From: Octopus sinensis
Taxonomy: Eukaryota
Direction: 5' to 3'
Assembly (NCBI RefSeq): GCF_006345805.1
Contig: NC_043006.1
Coordinates: 76,942,001-77,006,000 of the forward strand
DNA: 64,000 nucleotides
Shown here one piece after another: positions 11,378 through 50,992 of the stretch. The notes beneath the pieces are model-generated. The model searched no databases and was not told the origin of the DNA. It was given only the letters and a program-made list of their open reading frames with translations. How positions within the stretch are numbered: position 1 is the stretch's first letter; every line of letters begins with the position of its first letter. The position numbers were made by a program, and so were the translations under genes.

Positions 11378-11560
11378 TGTTTCTTTATTAGCCACACAGG
11401 GCTGAACCCAGAGGGGCCAAATTACAAAGTAGAGCTATTCTTTTTGGTGAGAAAAAAAGGGGGCGGGTAGGTTTTCGATCAAAAGGGATCGTAAAAAAAG
11501 AAAGAAAAAAGAAAAAAACATCACTAGGGATCAGGTATCACAGAAATGTCTTGCCCATGC
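11378..11560 (-). mobile_element. Second, short 3'-UTR copy of the Tx1-like LINE at 33561-34374
   Basis: Reverse complement reads ctgtgatacctgatccct...gatcccttttgatcgaaacctac...aaaagaatagctctactttgtaa...cagccctgtgtggctaataaagaaac, colinear with 34045-34373. Confidence 0.8.
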
Positions 11561-15163: not shown

Positions 15164-15646
15164 ATGTTCTGTGCAGTGGCATTTTTACCACCAGAAGAAT
15201 TAATCGATAATTATGAAGATCTCTGTGAGGACGAATCAGTTCCAATGGATTCTATAAGCTATTTCGAGCTGACGTACATTGGATCAAAGAGAGGAAGACG
15301 TGACAGACGAGATCCCTTGTATCCAGTTAATTTTTGGACTGTTTACAGTCGAGTAATTCAGGAATTGCCTCGGACAAACAATGCTCTTGAGGGGTTTCTC
15401 TCAGCATTGCACACATCAATAACAAGCAAGCACCCAAACATCTGGAAGCTTATTAATGCTCTTCAAAAAGAAGAAACTCTTACACAGATCAAAATAATTC
15501 ATGCCCAAAGAGGAGTCAATCCACGGAAAAAGAGAAAAGACCAGTCAATAGATGCGCGGATAAAAGACCTTGTGCAATCTTATGAGAGTAACGATAAATT
15601 AGCTTTCCTAAAGGCAATTGCTCATTCATTAACATTTTCGGTTTAA
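15164..15646 (+). pseudogene. MULE transposase C-terminal fragment
   Basis: AFLP, YFELTYIG, PLYPVNFW, PRTNNALEG and HPNIWKLI are typical MULE C-terminal motifs. The upstream part carries stops and a SINE insertion. Confidence 0.85.
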
Positions 15647-16266: not shown

Positions 16267-16585
16267 CTGAGGATCAGTAACATTATCATATTTATTTATG
16301 TATTTTCCTTTCATCCAGTCATTTATTTATATTTTGCTAATTATCTACTACTTTTTCTTCTTAACAAATTTAGTGTTACAATCTCATAAAACACATTTAT
16401 TTCGTCTCGTCTAGAAGCTTAATTTTGTATTCATATCGACATTGCATATTCATAAACATGATACTATCAATTGGATATGGGCAGGATTAGAGCTCAGACG
16501 TAGGACGCCGGAACAAATGTCGCAAAACACTTCTGACACACTGATTCTACCAATCCACAGTCGTGATTATATCATGGCTTGGTTT

Positions 16586-17225
16586 ACGGCGGTGAATTGT
16601 AGAATGACTACTGCGCTGGACAACATGCTTGGTGGTATTTCTTCTGACTTTAAAGTCGGCGAGCTGGCAGAAAGGTTAGCAAGCCGGGCGAAATGCTTAG
16701 CAGTATTTCGTCTGCCGCTACGTTGTGGGTTCAAATTCCGCCGAGGTCGACTTTGCTTTTCATCCTTTCGGGGTCGATTAAATAAATACCAGTTACGCAC
16801 TGGGGTCGATGTAATCGACTTAATACCTATGTCTGTCCTTGTGAGTCCCCTCTATGTTTAGCCCCTTGTGGGTAATAGAGAAATAGGTATTTCTTCTGCC
16901 GTTACGTTCTGATTTCAAATTCCGCCGCGGTCGACTTTGCCTTTCATCCTTTCGGGGTCGATTAAATAAGTACCAGTTACGCACTGGGGTCGATTTAAAC
17001 GACTTGATCCGTTTGTCTGTCCTTGTTTGTCCTCTCTGTGTTTAACCCCTTGTGGGTAGTAAAGAAATAGGTATTTCTTCTGACTTTACGTTCTGAGTTC
17101 AAAAGCCGTCGGGGCCGACTTTGTCTTTCATCCTTTGAGGGCGATAAAAAAAAAGAGGGATCAATTCGATGTAATCGACTTAATCCCTTCCACGAAATTG
17201 CCGGCTATGTACCAAAGTTTGAAAC
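16586..17225 (+). mobile_element. Nested SINE A cluster: an older short-tail copy interrupted by two long-tail copies (16653-17069), with 19-bp duplication GGTATTTCTTCTGACTTTA
   Basis: Duplication at 16634-16652 and 17070-17088. Internal junction aaata|ggtatttc after 16885. Confidence 0.85.
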
Positions 17226-17281
17226 GAATCTCATGACTTGGTTTCGCACTGAAAGATTTATGAAGGGTAGTGTTGATATAC

Positions 17282-33542: not shown

Positions 33543-34556
33543 CCTACCTACCTGTCTATCTGGGATTATGTGGAACAACTGCTGTCACGTGTGGGACGAG
33601 TCGGTTTATCAGCTGAGTCTATCGTCAATATTGTCACGCATCCTTCCTTCAAACGGGAAGGAAGAGCTATTTTCATCATCCTTGTGGCTATGGCGAAAGA
33701 ATGTATCTGGTGGACGCGTCTGAAAGGATTGGAGACAAACACTTTCCTCTCTGGTCAATCTCTCATCAACTTCTTCAAGTACCACTTGAAAAGGAAAGTG
33801 AGAGTAGAGAGGCAAGTTTTGTCTAGCGAATGTTTTAAAAAAAGATGGGTGAATGTAGCAAGGATGGCACGTATGAATGACGAAGCCACCTTGAGCATAA
33901 TCCTATGAACCCAGAAATTGAAAACAGAGGGTTACCCACTTGCAAACAAATGTGGTAACATATAACAATATTGACCAAGGTTACCGTGGTCTTTTTCGTA
34001 GGCTTTTCTTCCCACGGATAAACCTTACTTGCTTTCCCCTTTACACCATATATCATAACACTGTGATACACGATCCCTATTGATCGTTCTTTTTTTCCTC
34101 TTCCCCTTTTTTTCCCTTTTTTTCTTCTTTTTTCATTTCTCTTTTCTTTTTTCCTTTTCTTTTTTTTTCTTTTTATTCTTTTTATTTTTTATTTTATTTA
34201 TTTATTTTTGTTTGTTTGTTCTTTTCTTCCCTTTTATGATCCCTCTTGATCGAAAACCTACGCCACCCCCTTTTTTCTTTTTTGTTTTTTGTTTTTTTTC
34301 ATCCCCCAAAAGAAAAGCTCTACCTTGTAACTTGTCCCATCTGTGTGCAGCCCTGTGTGGCCAATAAAGAAACTTATCTATCTATCTATCTATCTACCTA
34401 CCTGTCTATCTATCTATCTATCTGCCTACCTGCCTGTCTTTCTATTTATCTATCTATCTATCTATCTACCTACCTGTCTATCTATCTATCTATCTGCCTA
34501 CCTGCCTGTCTTTCTATCTATCTATCTGTCTATCTATCTATCTATCTATCTATCTG

Positions 34557-34712: not shown

Positions 34713-35699
34713 TCAATCTATGTATGTTGACAAAGAAGAGGGGGAATTTGAAGAAGATTTGACCACTCGCAGCTCTGGAGCTGAAACTAGTATTGAAAAG
34801 AAATACACACATATATAAGTATATACACATCATGTGTGTGTGTGTGTGTGTGTGCGTGTGTAGCAACTACAGTCGCGATTTTTTCATCGCCTTTTCCTCC
34901 GTCAGAATGGAAGACCCTCCTAATACACTTTTGACTGAACACTTTCCTAAGACGACTAATCTGTACAATGATTACCATATGGTCGTATAACCTGTTATAA
35001 TATGTTAAATCGTTAGAGCATAACTTGTTGGTGCCAGTGAACCGCTAAAGCTCACTGAATTTGCATGTCTTCTTATAGATTTGTTGTCAGTAATCTATAT
35101 TAAATCCCACCAGGCTGTTACTTTTTTATTCTGCTGTTTATTCCCAACTCTTCTAGAAAGGTTTTACATCGCATACTTGTAAAGATATCAACCTCTTAAA
35201 ACACGACCAGATAGAGAACAGAGCCTGACAGAATCGATAGCGTGTTTGAATGTAAAATGAATTTCATTGTGCCATGTGTGGTACTGCGATATGTCTACTG
35301 ACTCCCCAACATGTAATTCGTAAGAGATATGTTCAGCTACTTCTAAATACGTATCAGGCGAAAATGCATTTTTCTGTTACGTAAAGATATAACATTATTA
35401 TTAACGTAGATAGGTTTCGGCCAGAGCACCACCTGGTGAAGTCTTTTAGATCGTGATTCACACCTCAGTCATATACGGGACACCAGAGCGCACTCTAGCA
35501 AAGAGTTATTATTGTTGGAGACATATCTAGGTGTAAGAGGTTGGTCCGGGAGTTTTGGGAAAAATGTTCACACAAGGCCAGTAATTTCGGGTTTGATGAT
35601 GAGTCGATTACATTAACCCTAGTGATCAACCAGTGTTGATTTTATCTAATCTCGAAAGTCGACCTCGGCGGAATTTGAACTCAGAATATAAAGATAGAA

Positions 35700-36107
35700 G
35701 AACCAGTTCTACTATGTGGCTCAGAAACCTGGACGTTACCAAAAAAAAGCTTGAGAGGCGGTTGGATGGAACTTACACTCACCTCCTCATGAGAGCTCAA
35801 AATCTCTCGTGGAAGCGTCATCCAACCAAAGTACAAATATATGGGAAACTACCTCCTGTATCATCTCTTGTGAAAGGTAGAAGAGTCCAGTTTGCTGGAC
35901 ATTGTTGTCGAGCTGAAAACGAGGTAATTTCTACTCTTCTCTGGAAGCCATCTACTCGCGATACCAGAGAGCGCACACTCTCCTACCCTGATGTAATCCC
36001 CAGGGATACAGGCATCCAGCAACAGGACCTCCGTAATGCTATGATGGGTATGAAGTCTGGTGGAACATAGTAAATTCCATTGTCTCGACCATGATGATGA
36101 TGATATG
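35700..36107 (+). mobile_element. 5'-truncated RTE-clade LINE with (GAT)n tail and 12-bp TSD, inserted in a minus-strand SINE A
   Basis: KLERRLDGTYTHLLMRAQNLSWKRHPTK.QIYGKLPP...RRVQFAGHC is an RTE-type RT C-terminus. TSD ATAAAGATAGAA at 35688-35699 and 36108-36119. The host SINE halves join across the insertion. Confidence 0.9.
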
Positions 36108-36574
36108 ATAAAGATAGAAAAATGTTACTAAGCATTTTGTCGGGCATGTTAAAGATTCTGGCGGAAAATGATGGACAATATTAGTTTCAAATTCTGGGAA
36201 ACCTGCTGCTATTTTGGAGGATGGGTGAGTCGATTAAATTAATTATGAACTAGCACTTATTTCCCCTGACTCCAAAATGATGAAAAGCAAAGTCGACCTC
36301 GACCGAATTTGAGCTGAAGATGTAAAGAAGATCGAAATGCCGCAAAGCATTTTGGCTGGCGTGCTAACGATTTTCTAGCTCACCCAATACAAGGGCAGCG
36401 GTTTTAGTTGGAGTGGGTTAGTCAAGTATATCAACGCGAGTGCTGAACTGGTACTTGTTTTATTGACACTGAAAGAATGAAAAGCAAAATCGATCGTGGC
36501 AACGGTTGAATTCAGTATGTAAAGCTAGAAGAAATGCTGCTAAGCAAATGAATATGCCAGATCGTCGACTTAAA

Positions 36575-37180
36575 GTTGAAGAATAATATTCTTTATTCCT
36601 CTAGACACAAGGCTCGAAATTTTGGAGGAGGAGGACAGTCGATTAGATCGACCCCAATACGCAACTGGTACTTAGTTTATCGCCCCCGAAATGATGAAAA
36701 GCAGAGTCGACCTCGGCGGAATTTGAACTCAGAGCGTAAAGACGGACGAAATACCTATTTCTTTACTGCCCAAAAGGGGCTACACACAGAGGTGGGGGGA
36801 GGCAAACAAGGACAGACAAACGGATTAAGTCGATTATATCGACCCCAGTGCGTAACTGGTACTTATTTAATCGACCCCGAAAGGATAAAAGGCAAAATCG
36901 ACCTCGGCGGAATTTGAACTCAGAACGTAGCGGCAGACGAAATACCTATTTCTTTACTACCCACAAGGGGCTACACACAGAGGGGACAATCAAGGAGAGA
37001 TAAACGGATTAAGTCGATTATATCGACCCAAGTGCGTAACTGGTACTTATTTAATCGACCCCGAAAGGATGAAAAGCAATGTCGACCTCGGCGGAATTTG
37101 AACTCAGCTAGTAACGGCATACGAAATACCGCTAAGCATTTCGCCCGGCGTACTAACGTTTCTGCCAACTCGCCGCCTTA
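36575..37180 (-). mobile_element. SINE A trimer: full long-tail + headless long-tail + headless short-tail
   Basis: Two junctions gacgaaatacc|tatttcttta (near 36755 and 36945), the reverse complement of aaagaaata|ggtatttc. Confidence 0.88.
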
Positions 37181-37382
37181 AAGAGATGAATAACATCGAT
37201 TTCTAATTTTGACACAAGTCCAGTAATTTGTGAGGCGGAGTACGTTGATCATATCAACTTCAGCCTTTACCGACCCGAAAGTACAAAAGGCATAGTTCGA
37301 ACCATTCGGAATTTGAGCTCAGAACGTATAGACAGATGAAATGCCAGCTCACTGCCTAAAGGAATAACATTAATATTGAATG

Positions 37383-40760: not shown

Positions 40761-41477
40761 TATATGTATCCTATATAAATATTCATACATACACACATAA
40801 ATACATACACCAGAAATATCGAAGGTCCTTTCCGAAACATAAGATCACAAGACAAGTTTCTCGGATTCTGTAGCTTATATTTTACTCCTTTTTCCTGGAC
40901 AGAACGACGGTTCGTCGTAGGGTTACTCATGTTTGCCAACTGAATAGACTGGAGAAAAATGAAATGAATTGTCTTGCCCAAAGAACACACCGCATCGCCC
41001 GGTTCAGGAATCGATACCACTATCTAACGATCATGAGTGCAACGTCCTAACCATTCACACACGCGCCTCACTCTCCACCCACACACATATACATACAAAC
41101 ATACATACACTCGCGTGTATATATGATTGTTGTATAAATGCTATTTTCAGTGAGAGAAAGAGCGAAAAAGAGAGGGAGAGAGAGGGCAAGAGAGAGAGAG
41201 AGAGACAGAGAAAGAGAGACAGACAGACAGAGAGTAAACGTCAGCTTCCAGAATTTCTCATATCTATTAACTGAACAATATGTACTTCCTTACGTATGTT
41301 CTACACATTATCTTGCAATAAATAACCGCATAACTGACAATCCATTATATTATTGCAAACTCTAACTGGCTAAGATATATTTCTCTCACATCACATCCTT
41401 CATATATCTTTATTCAATATTAACATACCAATATTTGGACTTGTACCAAAATCTGAAATCAATATTAACTTACCAAA

Positions 41478-43390
41478 GAGCGGCACGCTGGCAGAATGGT
41501 TAGCACACATTTCTTCATGTTCTTTACGTTCTGAGTTCAAATTCTGCTGAGGTCGATTTTGACTTTCATCGTTTTGGGGGTCGATAAAATAAGTACCAGT
41601 TGAGCAATGATATCGATGTAATCGATTAATCCGCCTCCTCCGAAATATCTGGCCTTGTACTAAGATTTGAAACCAATATATATGATATATGGCAACGAAC
41701 TTGCAGTATCGTTAGCCCGCCGGACAGAATGCTTAGCGACATTTCGTCCATCTATACGTTCTGGGTTCAAATCCTACCGGGGTTCACTTTGCCTTTCTTA
41801 TTTCGCTGATACTTATTTTATCGGGGTCAATAAAATAAGTACCAGCTGAGCATTGGGGTCAATGTAATCTATTATCTACATTTTCGGATTTGTTGAGCTT
41901 GTGCCAAATGTGAAGCCCTTATCATTCATCAGTTTTGAAACGGTGAGCTGGCAGAATAGATAAATGAGCTGGCACGTTGAACAAAATGCTTCGTGGCGCA
42001 TCGCCGGTTTTCACGTTCTGAGTTCAAATTTCCAAGAGTCCGACTGTGTCTCTCTTCCTTTCCGATTCAGTAAAATAAAAATACTAGTTGAGCACTGGGA
42101 TCGATCTAATCGACTCCTCTCTACTCCCCAAAATTTTCTGGCGTGTGCCTATGATAGAAAGAAATATCAAATTACAAAATTAATACATGGACCTATTAAA
42201 CAAAATTATTTACTTGTTCGTACGCGTATCTGTTTACAACCTCAACACACACTAACACTTGTTCATCTCTATTTTTGAAACTTTGCTTTTTTACAATAGC
42301 AAATATTAAATTTCATTATTGATTAATGTTATTCATATTCAGTTCCCAATTACTCAGTATTTTATTTACTGGCTTTTTTTTATATAAAAAAGCGATTATT
42401 TTTAGCCATCTTATACTTCTAATTACTTCTAATTACCTATGCGTTATTTTCGAATCAACTTGCATAATATACCAAGCCATCCGAACAAATATAGTCTATT
42501 AGCTATATAGTCTAATATGTTCAATACATATGATTATTATAATTGTCACCTTGCTGAATTTCATCCGTCGTCACGTTCTGAGTTCAAATTCCGCTGAGAT
42601 CGGCTTTGCCTTTCATCTTTTCGGAGTCGATAAAATAAGTACCAGTTGAAGATCGGGGACGATGTAATCGACATACCGCCTCTCCCAAACGTGCTGGCCT
42701 TGTGCCAAAATTTGAAACCGTTTTTAAAAGCTGACAGAATCGCTAGCACTCCGGGCAAAATGCTTAGCGGTATTTCGTCTGCAGTTACGTTCTGAGTTCA
42801 AATTCCGGCGAGGTCGACTTTGCCCTTTATCCTTTCAGGGTCGATGAAATAAGTACCAGTTACGCACTGGGGTCGATATGATCGACTTAATCCGTTTGTC
42901 TCTCCTTGTTTGTCATCTCTGTTTAGCCCCTTGTGGGTATTAATGAAATAAGCATTTCTTCCGGCTTTACGTTCTGAGTTCAAATTCCACCGAGGACGAC
43001 TTTGCCTTCCCTCCCTTCAGGGTCAACGAAATAAATACCAGTCAAGTGCTGGGCTCAACGTAATTGATTGGTCACCTCCTCCCAAAATATCAGGCCTTGT
43101 GCCCAAAGTACAAAGGCCTTTTTTTCAGGAGGTGATGTTAGCGGCAGTTCTTTCGGTTCTTCGTGCCATGATTTAAAGACGGAGTGCAAACAGTTTCGTT
43201 AGCACACCGGAATAACTGCCTAGCAGCATTTCGGTCATCGTTACCTTCTAAGTTCAAACTCGACTGAAATTGACCTTGCCTTCCATCCTCTCGAGATCGA
43301 TGAAATAAGTACCAGTTGACCACTAAGGTCGATGCAATCGACGTACACACTCACTCAAAATTTCAGGCCTTGAGACTATAATCGAAAAGA
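41478..43390 (+). mobile_element. Cluster of about 7 plus-strand SINE A units (41478, 41690, 41940, 42560, 42725 dimer, 43165)
   Basis: Repeated gttctgagttcaaattc...gtcga...aagtaccagt bodies, all on the plus strand. Confidence 0.85.
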
Positions 43391-49400: not shown

Positions 49401-49544
49401 CTATAAGCAAACTCTTTGGCGCGTCGAACAAAAATGCTTAGCTGTATTTCTTTAGGCTTTATGTTCGGAGTTCAAATCTCGCTATAGTGGATTTTGTCGT
49501 TCATTCCTTCATGACACGTAAAATAAGAGTACCAGTCAAATACC

Positions 49545-49972
49545 TTTCTACTTTAGGCACAAGGCCCGAAATTTTGGGGGAGGGAGCCAGTCGATTAGAT
49601 CGACCCCAGTATGCAACAGGTACTTAATATATTGATCCCGAAAGGATGAAAGGCAAAGTCGACCTCGGTGGAATTTGAACTCAGAACGTAATGACAAACG
49701 AAAAACCACTAAGCATTCCGCCCGCCGTATAAACGTTTCTTATTTCTTTATTGCCCACAAGGGGCTAAACATAGAGGGGACAAACAAGGACAGACAAAAG
49801 AATCAAGTCAACTTCATCGACCTCAATGCGTAACTGGTACTTAATTTATCGACCCCGAAAGGATGAAGGGCAAAGTCGACCTCGGCGGAATTTGAACTCA
49901 TAACGTAACGACAGACGAAAAACCGCTAAACATTTCGCCCGGCATGCTAACGCTTCTGCCAGCTCGCCGCCT
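49545..49972 (-). mobile_element. SINE A dimer: long-tail copy (49741-49972) joined to a headless short-tail copy
   Basis: The junction on the minus strand reads aataaagaaata|agaaacgttt. Confidence 0.85.
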
Positions 49973-50539
49973 TATGTATCTATCAGATACTGAAGTCGAT
50001 GTACTTGACTAACCACTTCCCCTAACAGAGCTGGCCTTGTGCAAAATTTTGAATCAATGATTATTGTTGTTTTGAAGGCGTCGTGCTAGCAGAATTGTAA
50101 ATGTTTGAGCAAAATTACTTCGTGGCATTTGTTCAAATCTCATTTGTCTGTTATCTTGTCTGTGGCCATGTTGGGGCACTGCCTTGAAGGACTTTAGTCA
50201 AATGAATCAACCCCAGTACCTTTTCCATTAAAGCCTGGTGCTTATTCTATCGGTTTCTTTCGCCGAACCGCTACCTTGCGGGGATGTAAACACACCAGCA
50301 CTGGTTGTCAAGCGGTGGTAAGGACAAATGCAGACACGAATACACACACATGCGCACACACACGTACACACACATACATACACACACGATGGGCTATTTT
50401 CATTTTCGATCTCCTAAAATCCACCCACAAGGCTTTAGTCGGCTCAAGGCCGTAGTAGAAGACACTTGCTCAAGGTACCACGCAGTGGGACTGAACCCGG
50501 GACCATGTGGTTGAGAAGCAAACTTCTTGCCAACAGCCT

Positions 50540-50875
50540 CAATTCTATATACCTTCCGATTAAATAAGTACCAGTTACACACTGGTGTCGATATAATCGA
50601 CTTAATCCTTTTGTCTGTCCTTGTTTGTCCCCTCTGTGTGTAGTAGCACCGTGTGGGCAGTAAAAAAATTAGAAACGTTAGCACACCGCGCGAAATGCTT
50701 AGCAGTATTTCGTCTATCCTTATATCCTGAGTTCAAATTTTGCTGAGGTCGACTTTGCCTTTCATCCTTTCGGAGTCCATAAATTAAGTACCAGTTGCGT
50801 ACTCGGGTCGATCTAATCGACTTGCCCCTTCCCCTAAAATTTTGAGCCTTGTGCCGAGAGTAGAAAAGAATATTA
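50540..50875 (+). mobile_element. SINE A dimer: 5'-truncated long-tail copy joined to a short-tail copy
   Basis: Junction gcagtaaaaaaatt|agaaacgttagcac near 50670. Confidence 0.8.
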
Positions 50876-50992
50876 TTCAACGATAAGAAAACCAAAGAAT
50901 AAACAAGGCCGGCTGAGTTGAATGTTACCGGATCTGCTATCAGCTGGGCATAGGTACGCTTTGAGTTGAAACCCTGCATGATCCTAAATTAC

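What the first reader, a model, noticed from the sequence alone, without database searches (positions are those of the whole stretch)
16586..17225. SINE-into-SINE insertion at fixed sites: long-tail copies repeatedly abut GGTATTTC or AGAAACGTT in other SINE heads
Seen: of 13 long-tail 3' ends I counted, 7 run directly into a headless SINE A copy at one of two positions. The first is aaagaaata|GGTATTTC (16885, 17069, twice in 36575-37180, variant AGCATTTC at ~42950). The second is |AGAAACGTT (49741, ~50670). At 16634-16652 and 17070-17088 a 19-bp duplication brackets the insert, and the older head and body rejoin across it. The first junction is itself a small palindrome (GAAATA-GG-TATTTC). Established: Tx1-clade endonucleases are often sequence-specific. 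Inference: the Tx1-tailed SINE targets pre-existing SINE heads, building nested multimers; homologous 5' joining would hide most TSDs. Alternatives are RT template jumping or unequal crossover.
Basis: partly seen in the sequence, partly recalled or inferred. Interest (0 to 1): 0.8.

Follow-up and report, generated by a model that had tools for sequence, protein, structure and literature searches.

The report
SINE copies nested at fixed head sites
In this animal genome window, a young short retrotransposon (SINE) repeatedly ends exactly against one of two fixed positions inside the heads of related SINE copies, building small head-to-tail arrays; the pattern is real and far from random, but one window cannot show whether it comes from targeted insertion into DNA or from joining of RNA or cDNA.

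Summary
The window holds 13 copies of a 231-bp "long-tail" SINE (L). Seven of their 3' ends (…AAAGAAATA) abut a headless related SINE in the same orientation. Five abut consensus position 48 (GGTATTTC) and two abut position 15 (AGAAACGTT). Chance does not explain this: P is about 1e-4 for the nesting and about 2e-6 for the two-site clustering.

The 19-bp duplication at 16634-52 / 17070-88 is exact. It brackets an L dimer inside an older SINE that keeps its own outer target-site duplication (TSD, 13/14).

The arrays are not recent tandem duplications, and they are not copies of one composite master. The two position-15 junctions carry different L subfamilies.

The Tx1 / sequence-specific endonuclease reading is untested. 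Six L copies sit at unrelated TA-rich sites, and only one of five loci shows an inner TSD.

New facts: both junction bonds lie at loop edges of two head hairpins. All three young "S2" hosts are headless behind an L tail. One outside contig shows a third junction position (~122).

Best reading (about 0.45): target-primed insertion at hot spots in SINE heads, with some L-S2 composites then spreading as units. Main rival (about 0.3): RNA-level chimeras formed by template jumping or ligation. A new variant of a known kind.

The parts
16572..16585 (+). Outer TSD copy 1 of the host S1 SINE of locus A (TCATGGCTTGGTTT).
   Evidence: 13/14 match with 17231-17244.
16586..16652 (+). Retained head of the host S1 SINE (consensus about 1-66). 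Its last 19 bp (16634-16652) are inner TSD copy 1.
16653..16885 (+). A1: full-length L SINE (starts AAGTCGGCGAG, ends GAGAAATA), 93.5% identical to consL.
16886..17069 (+). A2: headless L unit, consensus 48-231, 91.8% to consL. It carries T at position 56, as its host does and as no other L unit does.
17070..17230 (+). Body and tail of the host S1 SINE (consensus 48 to end). Its first 19 bp are inner TSD copy 2 (17070-17088).
17231..17244 (+). Outer TSD copy 2 of the host S1 (TCATGACTTGGTTT).
36947..37177 (-). B1: full-length L unit of array B.
36756..36946 (-). B2: headless L unit (consensus 48-231) with a 7-bp C-rich insertion in the tail.
36590..36755 (-). Bh: headless S2 unit (consensus 48 to end, tail …GCCTTGTGTCTAGAGGAATAAAGAATATTATTC). 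No host head lies upstream of B1.
42729..42950 (+). C: L unit (consensus 8-231) ending GAAATA against Ch.
42951..43110 (+). Ch: headless, diverged S-type unit that starts AGCATTTC (consensus 48).
49741..49975 (-). D: full-length L unit (subfamily GATAAATTAAG / CTCTATGTTTAG) ending GAAATA against Dh.
49544..49740 (-). Dh: headless S2 unit that starts AGAAACGTT (consensus 15). The D+Dh composite is flanked by a 15-nt duplication of an older antisense S SINE (49529-43 / 49976-90, 11/15).
50557..50670 (+). E: 5'-truncated L unit (consensus about 121-231, subfamily GATTAAATAAG / CTCTGTGTGTAG). No host head lies upstream.
50671..50877 (+). Eh: headless S2 unit that starts AGAAACGTT (consensus 15).
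35688..36122 (+). Independent control event. A 5'-truncated LINE fragment with a (GAT)n tail (35703-36107) is inserted antisense into an S SINE. Its TSD ATAAAGATAGAArAA (35688-702 / 36108-122, 14/15) equals SINE consensus 53-67 and overlaps the 48-66 TSD interval of locus A.
11380..11521 (-). Tail-only relative of the L tail (…CAGCCCTGTGTGGCTAATAAAGAAAC), probably the 3' end of the partner LINE. It is not in a SINE head. A second copy lies at 34204-34372 (+).

Best explanation
Three related tRNA-like SINE families share a head and body (consensus 1-168) but differ in their LINE-type tails: S1 (old), S2 (intermediate) and L (young).

I propose that L RNA is inserted by target-primed reverse transcription (TPRT), and that the primer-strand nick falls preferentially at two bonds inside resident SINE heads: 47|48 and 14|15. 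The second-strand nick falls about 15-20 nt downstream, at 66|67 in locus A.

Where the host head is too diverged to pair with the new cDNA, as in locus A, the event leaves a classical TSD and both heads. Where the host is about 90% identical (S2 or L), the 5' end is assumed to be resolved by annealing to the host head. That leaves 'a full unit plus a headless unit' with no inner TSD. Repeated hits build arrays such as L-L(48-231)-host(48-end).

Some L-S2 composites carry L's Pol III promoter and the S2 tail. These probably then retrotransposed as units. D was inserted whole into an older SINE, and E is a 5'-truncated composite.

Shown: the fixed junctions, the TSD at locus A, and independent formation of junctions. 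Inferred: homology-assisted 5' resolution, amplification of composites, and the cause of the site preference (sequence, DNA structure or chromatin).
For: 1. Locus A has an exact 19/19 TSD that starts at position 48, with the host head retained and the host's own outer TSD at 13/14.
2. A second, unrelated TPRT event hit nearly the same interval of another SINE copy. A (GAT)n-tailed LINE inserted antisense, with a 14/15 TSD equal to consensus 53-67. My own rough estimate (not computed by any tool) is that two TSD intervals would overlap this closely by chance about 5% of the time.
3. All five position-48 junctions use exactly the bond that was nicked in A.
4. The nesting and the site clustering are far beyond chance.
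5. Junctions formed independently. Host types differ. D and E carry different L subfamily markers and are the most distant L pair. Adjacent units are not closest relatives.
6. Four of the five position-48 hosts read GTATTTC after position 48 (…|GGTATTTC). The one S1-type host that was hit (Ah) has this motif, whereas most S1 copies read GGCATTTC.
7. On the primer strand this motif reads …ATACC|, which resembles the …ATAY| ends at standalone L and D sites.
8. A2 carries the host-specific T56, which none of the other L units has.
9. D+Dh is flanked as a whole by a 15-nt TSD (11/15), and E is a 5'-truncated composite. Both fit the secondary spread of composites.
10. There is a published precedent. 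Crocodilian SINEU elements mobilised by Tx1-Mar LINEs insert at two preferred regions of a Mariner transposon and form tandem copies (PMC4494074).
Against: - Only 1 of 5 loci has an inner TSD or a retained host head.
- There is no positive evidence for homology-assisted resolution. Rare variants shared by adjacent units are not enriched: 2 observed against 0.8 expected.
- All three young S2 units in the window, plus one in contig L062, are headless and sit directly behind an L tail (4/4). About 4 of 23 other SINE units do so. A pure DNA-target model does not predict this.
- Position 15 has no TAT/ATAC motif.
- Six of 13 L copies are at unrelated sites.
- The two probable partner-LINE 3' ends are not in SINE heads.
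- Both junction bonds are loop edges of RNA hairpins and are Y|R steps, which fits RNA cleavage better.
- L062 shows a third junction position, about 122.
Confidence: 0.45

Rival explanations
1. RNA-level chimeras. SINE RNAs are cleaved, or the reverse transcriptase stops, at the edges of the two apical loops of the head hairpins (C14|A15 and C47|G48). The reverse transcriptase then runs off the 5' end of the fragment and jumps to an L RNA or its ribonucleoprotein. Alternatively an RtcB-type ligase joins the pieces before reverse transcription. Each composite would be one retrotransposition event with one outer TSD.
For: - Eight of 8 junctions keep the exact L 3' end while the downstream partner is 5'-truncated. 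This is the U6/L1-chimera signature (PMC6789731; PMC2104539 and PMC4476161).
- The truncation points are 15, 15, 48 (five times) and about 122.
- Both recurrent bonds are loop edges of the two most stable local hairpins, each with a z-score of about -3, and all are Y|R steps.
- Four of 5 loci lack a host head and an inner TSD.
- D is flanked as a whole by a TSD, and E is 5'-truncated inside the L part.
- All young S2 units are headless behind an L tail.
- Three old S copies carry deletions inside the same hairpin region.
- Same-orientation tail-to-head arrays are common.
Against: - Locus A has a 19/19 duplication of host positions 48-66 with the host head retained. To explain it at RNA level needs an extra jump onto a 1-66 fragment of the same diverged S1 RNA, or a roughly 1-5% coincidence in which a dimer inserted at exactly bond 47|48.
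- The unrelated LINE's TSD at 53-67 points to a DNA-level hot region.
- Pol III SINE transcripts normally extend past the element's end. A precise GAAATA acceptor end therefore needs internal re-initiation or 3' processing.
- No known ribozyme was found by Rfam.
- The S2-versus-L asymmetry is not explained here either.
Confidence: 0.3
2. Composite master lineages. A few L-S2 (and L-L) composite loci arose once or a few times by any mechanism. Pol III transcribes them from the L head through to the S2 tail. Most junction-bearing copies would then be descendants, not new junction formations.
For: - Young S2 units occur only as headless passengers behind L (3/3 in the window, plus L062).
- D and E diverge equally in the L part (82.3%) and in the host part (82.1%).
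- D was inserted as a unit with an outer TSD, and E is a 5'-truncated composite.
- The L-full + L(48-231) dimer occurs twice (A1A2 and B1B2).
Against: - The hosts at position 48 belong to three different families.
- D and E carry different L subfamily markers and are the most distant L pair. Dh, Eh and Bh are equidistant from one another, a star-like pattern.
- Locus A shows a primary insertion with a TSD.
- Recurrence of exactly the same two bonds still needs a site-specific first step.
Confidence: 0.15
3. DNA-level tandem duplication. After one founding insertion, unequal crossover, replication slippage or gene conversion produces the period-184 arrays.
For: TRF reports arrays of 2.4-2.6 copies with periods 184 and 191. 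The units share 120 bp of homology on which misalignment could occur.
Against: A1/A2 are 88.0% and B1/B2 88.5% identical. That is no closer than to dispersed copies (up to 91.9%), and they differ in subfamily markers. Duplication cannot explain junctions at five separate loci.
Confidence: 0.05

Closest known systems
SINEU SINEs mobilised by Tx1-Mar LINEs in crocodilians (Kojima 2015, PMC4494074)
   Same: A SINE inserts preferentially at a few fixed regions of another transposon, in a fixed orientation per region. Tandem copies arise by sequential insertion. Preference ranges from weak (13-23%) to strong (90%) between families.
   Different: There the target is an unrelated Mariner DNA transposon, tandem copies sandwich a TSD, and partner Tx1 LINEs are found at the same sites. 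Here the target is the head of the SINE's own relatives, most junctions lack an inner TSD, the partner LINE is unidentified, and its two probable 3' ends in the window are not at the site.
Tx1L / Tx1D, Keno, Mutsu, Kibi/Koshi: sequence-specific Tx1-clade LINEs (as summarised in PMC4494074)
   Same: Retrotransposition into a fixed site of a repeated sequence, attributed to endonuclease specificity.
   Different: Those elements are nearly always at their target. Here 6 of 13 copies are elsewhere, and membership of the Tx1 clade could not be tested.
U6/L1 and other bipartite or tripartite chimeric retrocopies (template switching: PMC2104539, PMC4476161; RtcB ligation: PMC6789731)
   Same: The upstream partner keeps its exact 3' end. 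The downstream partner is 5'-truncated. One TSD pair surrounds the whole chimera. Multi-part chimeras occur.
   Different: In those chimeras the truncation points are scattered. Here two bonds recur, both partners are related SINEs, and locus A has an inner TSD.
Nested retroposon insertions (transposition-in-transposition) and Alu-into-Alu hot spots at A-rich linkers and tails (from my own knowledge, not checked here)
   Same: SINEs insert into SINEs at places that fit the LINE endonuclease motif.
   Different: Those hot spots are simple A/T-rich tracts. Here the sites lie in a GC-rich tRNA-like head at hairpin loop edges, always in the same orientation.
Birth of dimeric SINEs (Alu from FLAM+FRAM; Twin SINE of Culex; shrew-mole dimeric SINE, PMC13023118)
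   Same: Two SINE monomers are fused head-to-tail and then amplified as a unit.
   Different: Those are single founding fusions. Here fusion appears recurrent and position-specific.

Membership tests
tRNA-derived SINE with a LINE-derived tail | Internal Pol III promoter (A and B boxes) in a tRNA-related head | tested here: inconclusive
   A-box-like TGGCAGAA (consensus 11-18) and B-box-like GAGTTCAAATTCC (73-85) are seen by eye. ARAGORN finds no tRNA, and Rfam gives no tRNA hit even at E<=10.
tRNA-derived SINE with a LINE-derived tail | Dispersed copies flanked by TSDs, with some copies 5'-truncated | tested here: met
   TSDs: L10297 18/20, L60302 16/18, L30850 18/19, L2904 8/9. Copies C and E are 5'-truncated.
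tRNA-derived SINE with a LINE-derived tail | 3' tail shared with a LINE | tested here: inconclusive
   Two tail-only elements (11380-11521 and 34204-34372) share about 80% identity over the last 42-50 nt of the L tail. No reading frame is attached, so their LINE nature is inferred.
SINE mobilised by a target-specific Tx1-clade LINE | Partner LINE belongs to the Tx1 clade | not testable with these tools
   No LINE reading frame that shares the L tail is in the window. The only LINE ORF (35603-36067) has a (GAT)n tail unrelated to L. Public contigs retrieved through it lack the SINE.
SINE mobilised by a target-specific Tx1-clade LINE | The large majority of copies sit at one target sequence with a constant TSD | tested here: not met
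   Seven of 13 3' ends (5 of 11 loci) are at two sites, and 6 copies are at unrelated TA-rich sites. Only 1 of 5 loci has a TSD at the target. This fits a preference, not specificity.
SINE mobilised by a target-specific Tx1-clade LINE | Partner LINE copies occupy the same target site | tested here: not met
   The two probable partner 3' ends (11380 and 34372) abut unique sequence and a (TATC)n repeat, not SINE heads. The sample is only n=2.
Chimeric retrocopies (template switch or RNA ligation) | Upstream partner has an intact 3' end and the downstream partner is 5'-truncated | tested here: met
   Eight of 8 junctions, including L062.
Chimeric retrocopies (template switch or RNA ligation) | One TSD pair around the whole chimera and none at the internal junction | tested here: inconclusive
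   D has an outer TSD of 11/15. B and C have weak outer candidates. A has an inner 19/19 TSD, which contradicts this feature.
Tandem repeat made by unequal crossover | Adjacent units are each other's closest relatives | tested here: not met
   A1/A2 are 88.0% and B1/B2 88.5% identical, against up to 91.9% with dispersed copies.
Ribozyme-bearing tandem retroelements (retrozymes, Sm-alpha, HDV-like 5' ribozymes) | A recognisable self-cleaving ribozyme whose cut site is the unit boundary | tested here: not met
   No hammerhead, HDV-like, twister or other ribozyme family was found at E<=10 in a single L copy or in array A. There is no CUGAUGA core by eye. An undescribed ribozyme is not excluded.

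The most novel reading that the evidence does not exclude
The two junction bonds are defined by structure, not by a DNA sequence motif. They are the loop edges of the two head hairpins (C14|A15 and C47|G48). There are two possible routes. Either the SINE RNA is cleaved there, by itself or by a tRNA-processing-type nuclease, and the fragments are joined or template-jumped into multimeric, possibly circular, SINE RNAs that are then retrotransposed. Or the retrotransposition machinery is drawn to the exposed segment between the A and B boxes of Pol III-bound SINE copies. That second route would be integration inside Pol III genes, a mode not described for LINE/SINE systems.
Probability: 0.2. Interest if true: 0.75.

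Novelty: new variant of a known kind. Interest (0 to 1): 0.5.

Why it matters
If L SINEs preferentially enter the heads of their own relatives, the genome holds a self-targeting SINE system. Such a system builds multimeric SINEs and gives birth to dimeric SINE families in plain view. It would also concentrate new insertions in already 'dead' DNA, a safe-haven strategy known for some LINEs but not for SINEs that target SINEs.

If the junctions are instead made at the RNA level, the same arrays would record site-specific processing of SINE RNA at tRNA-like loops, followed by template jumping or ligation. That would extend the U6/L1 chimera mechanism to SINE-SINE multimers.

Either way, repeat annotation and age estimates in this genome need to treat these composites as nested or chimeric events, not as tandem repeats. 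SINEs make up about a tenth of the window.

Tried and rejected
Attempts to obtain more of the genome:
- A metagenome scan with an L-tail 19-mer gave 61 chance hits with no SINE.
- A protein-database search with the SINE translated in its open antisense frame gave one 543-bp contig, L062, which was useful.
- A search with the LINE-fragment ORF gave 65 proteins. The five longest or closest contigs fetched (L063-L069) lack the SINE.
- Scans of genome contigs and viral contigs with a 22-mer of the SINE body gave one chance match in a haloarchaeal coding region and nothing else.
- ORF 15164-15646 did not identify the organism; its best hit is 56% to a Palaemon carinicauda protein.

Other negative results:
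- Unequal crossover as the origin of the arrays was rejected on pairwise identities.
- Host-derived segments or gene conversion between adjacent units: shared rare variants are not enriched.
- Known ribozymes or tRNA models in the SINE or across the junction: none.
- Microhomology between the L 3' end and the primer strand at positions 48 and 15: none. Only L062 has AATA.
- The 12-bp palindrome GACTTT|AAAGTC at the 5' junction of A rests on a private G>T change in A1, so I treat it as coincidence.
- A GAAATACC…CTAAGC stretch next to the tail-only element at 11380 is not a SINE.

Full report
**What is in the window.** The window is eukaryotic: about 35% G+C, very rich in microsatellites, with no tRNA or Rfam hits. 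From memory, an unrelated SINE seen at about 50395-50556 resembles octopus SINEs. A recent Octopus vulgaris annotation reports 11.6% SINE content and active L1-Tx1 LINEs (PMC13282606). I could not verify the organism.

Self-comparison and alignment define three related SINE families. They share a head and body (my consensus positions 1-168) and differ in the tail:
- L: 231 bp, tail …GTTTAGCCCCTTGTGGGCAATAAAGAAATA, 85-96% identical to its consensus.
- S1: about 213 bp or more, tail …GCCTTGTGCCAAAATTTGAAACC…, 72-88% identical to consensus.
- S2: tail …GCCTTGTGCCTAAAGTAGAAAGGAATATTATTC, with copies 80-84% identical to each other.

In these coordinates GGTATTTC is positions 48-55 and AGAAACGTT is positions 15-23.

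**Checking the observation.** BLAST with the consensuses finds 13 L SINE units. It also finds two tail-only relatives of the L tail (11380-11521 on the minus strand and 34204-34372 on the plus strand), which are probably 3' ends of the partner LINE. Seven L 3' ends run directly, in the same orientation, into a headless SINE unit:
- At position 48: 16885|6, 17069|70, 36947|6, 36756|5 and 42950|1.
- At position 15: 49741|0 and 50670|1.

These seven junctions lie at five loci:
- A: 16586-17230
- B: 36590-37177, minus strand
- C: 42729-43110
- D: 49544-49975, minus strand
- E: 50557-50877

With SINEs covering 9.9% of the window, five of eleven independent L loci nested in the same orientation has P about 1e-4. 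Five events falling on two of 210 positions has P about 1.6e-6. The 19-bp duplication at locus A is exact, and the host head and body rejoin across it.

**Independence of the events.** Adjacent units are not recent duplicates. A1/A2 are 88.0% identical and B1/B2 88.5%, while either matches dispersed L copies at up to 91.9%. They also differ in subfamily markers. This rules out unequal crossover.

The two position-15 composites carry L parts from different subfamilies. D has GATAAATTAAG and CTCTATGTTTAG. E has GATTAAATAAG and CTCTGTGTGTAG. They are the most distant L pair at 82.3%. Hosts at position 48 are an old S1 (A), an S2 (B), another diverged S (C) and L itself (A1|A2 and B1|B2). A single amplified composite master is therefore excluded, and the same two bonds were used repeatedly.

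**Anatomy of each locus.**

Locus A reads: outer TSD (16572-85), S1 head 1-66, full L (A1), L 48-231 (A2), S1 48-end, outer TSD (17231-44, 13/14). The inner 19/19 duplication of host positions 48-66 brackets the A1+A2 dimer. This is the signature of staggered nicks at 47|48 (primer strand) and 66|67.

Locus B reads full L, then L 48-231, then S2 48-end. It lies between two older S copies and has no host head.

Locus C reads L 8-231, then S 48-end, with no host head.

Locus D reads full L, then S2 15-end. As a whole it sits inside an older antisense S copy, whose positions 132-146 are duplicated on both sides (49529-43 / 49976-90, 11/15).

Locus E reads L about 121-231, then S2 15-end, with no host head.

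One outside contig from an ENA metagenome (L062) holds a full L whose GAAATA end abuts an S2 unit starting near position 122. It shows AATA microhomology and gives a third junction position.

**Features that bear on mechanism.**

(a) A separate TPRT event hit almost the same interval of another SINE. A 5'-truncated LINE with a (GAT)n tail (35703-36107) lies antisense in an S copy. Its 14/15 TSD equals SINE positions 53-67, which overlaps A's interval of 48-66.

(b) Standalone L copies have ordinary 9-20 bp TSDs that begin with TAT, ATA or GTAT. The machinery therefore has a loose TA-type preference, not strict specificity. GGTATTTC contains the only GTAT in the head, and the one S1-type host that was hit has it, whereas most S1 copies read GGCATTTC. 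Position 15 has no such motif.

(c) Folding shows two stable local hairpins in the head:
- H1: stem 9-14/21-26, loop 15-20.
- H2: stem 31-43/48-60, loop 44-47.

Each has a z-score of about -3. Bonds 14|15 and 47|48 are loop edges, and both are C|R steps. The L062 site is also C|A if its host resembled Dh. Three old S copies carry internal deletions in this hairpin region.

(d) All three young S2 units in the window, and the one in L062, are headless and sit directly behind an L tail. Roughly 4 of 23 other SINE units do so.

(e) I found no enrichment of rare variants shared by adjacent units: 2 observed against 0.8 expected. There is therefore no positive sign that upstream units carry host-derived heads. 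A2 does carry the host-type T56, which is unique among L units.

**Weighing the explanations.** Locus A, together with the LINE event in (a), shows that DNA-level TPRT does occur in the 48-67 segment of these SINEs. If the other position-48 junctions had a different origin, then an L dimer whose own internal junction is at 47|48 would have inserted at exactly bond 47|48 by coincidence. I put that coincidence at about 1-5% even after allowing for the motif preference. This favours insertion at hot spots as the origin of the junctions.

The missing heads then require homology-assisted 5' resolution. That is plausible because the new cDNA is about 90% identical to S2 and L heads. It would fail for the diverged S1 head of A, which is exactly the locus that kept its TSD.

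The S2 association, the unit-wise insertion of D and the truncated E are best explained by adding a second step. L-S2 composites have a Pol III promoter and a LINE-recognised tail, so they could spread as units.

The main rival is RNA-level chimera formation. In that model the RNA is cleaved, or the reverse transcriptase stops, at loop edges. This is followed by template jumping (PMC2104539, PMC4476161) or RtcB-type ligation (PMC6789731). It explains the loop-edge positions, the exact L 3' ends, the headless hosts, E and L062. It handles locus A poorly.

I rate the models as follows:
- DNA hot-spot insertion, with secondary spread of composites: about 0.45.
- RNA-level chimeras: about 0.3.
- Composite masters as the main source: about 0.15.
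- Recombination: about 0.05.

**Comparison with what is known.** The closest described system is SINEU/Tx1-Mar in crocodilians (PMC4494074). There, SINEs and their Tx1 partners insert at two preferred regions of a Mariner transposon, with tandem copies arising from sequential insertion. The present case differs in four ways:
- The target would be the head of the SINE's own relatives.
- Most junctions lack an inner TSD.
- About half of the copies are elsewhere.
- The partner LINE and its clade are unknown, so 'Tx1-tailed' remains an assertion.

The case also resembles U6/L1-type chimeras in junction anatomy. It does not meet the test for a crossover-made tandem repeat, and no known ribozyme was found.

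**Verdict.** This is a real, non-random and recurrent pattern, and a new variant of known kinds of behaviour (target-preferring SINE insertion or chimeric retrocopies). The mechanism cannot be settled from one 64-kb window plus one outside contig. A census of junctions, TSDs, empty sites and S2 copies in the source genome would settle it.

Noticed in passing
window 35688-36122: A 5'-truncated LINE fragment (ORF 35603-36067, no Pfam hit) with a (GAT)n tail is nested antisense in an S SINE. Its 14/15 TSD is ATAAAGATAGAArAA. Relatives of the ORF (up to 90% identity) occur on many ENA metagenome contigs that lack the SINE.
   Followed up: partly
window 49431-50053: An older S SINE on the plus strand is split at consensus 132-146 by the whole L+S2 composite D. 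The flanking 15-nt duplication (49529-43 / 49976-90) is 11/15 identical.
   Followed up: yes
window 36590-36755, 49544-49740, 50671-50877; L062 60-171: There is a third SINE subfamily, 'S2' (body GTTGCGTACTGGGGTCGATCTAATCGAC, tail …GTGCCTAAAGTAGAAAGGAATATTATTC). Its young copies occur only as headless units directly behind an L tail. The only S2-like copy with a head (41941-42160) is much more diverged.
   Followed up: partly
window 37200-37366, 41480-41675, 36389-36575: Three old S copies carry internal deletions inside the head hairpin region: consensus 16-51 (with GGCA microhomology), about 31-50, and about 24-39. The same region holds the two junction sites.
   Followed up: no
window 11380-11521 (-), 34204-34372 (+): These are short elements that share only the last ~50 nt with the L tail. 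They end in AATAAAGAAAC and are preceded by T-rich sequence and GATCCCTnTTGATCGAAAACCTAC. They are probably 5'-truncated copies of the partner LINE's 3' UTR.
   Followed up: partly
window ~50395-50556 (antisense); L062 ~430-543: A second, unrelated tRNA-like SINE (…GGGTTCAGTCCCACTGCGTGGTACCTTGAGCAAGTGTCTTCTACTA…) lies next to the 5' side of an L composite, both in the window and in the outside contig. From memory it resembles octopus SINEs.
   Followed up: no
window 36120-37366 (-), 41440-43372 (+): Seven to eight SINE units of different ages lie tail-to-head in one orientation, with spacers of 0-20 bp. This suggests a general tendency to insert at SINE ends, or serial template jumping.
   Followed up: no
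window 15164-15646 (+): A 160-aa ORF with no Pfam hit. Its best relative is 56% identical, an uncharacterised Palaemon carinicauda protein. It is probably a fragment of a DNA transposon gene.
   Followed up: partly
window 16647-16658: The 5' junction of the insert at locus A forms a perfect 12-bp palindrome, GACTTT|AAAGTC. It depends on a private G>T change in A1 and is probably coincidental.
   Followed up: partly
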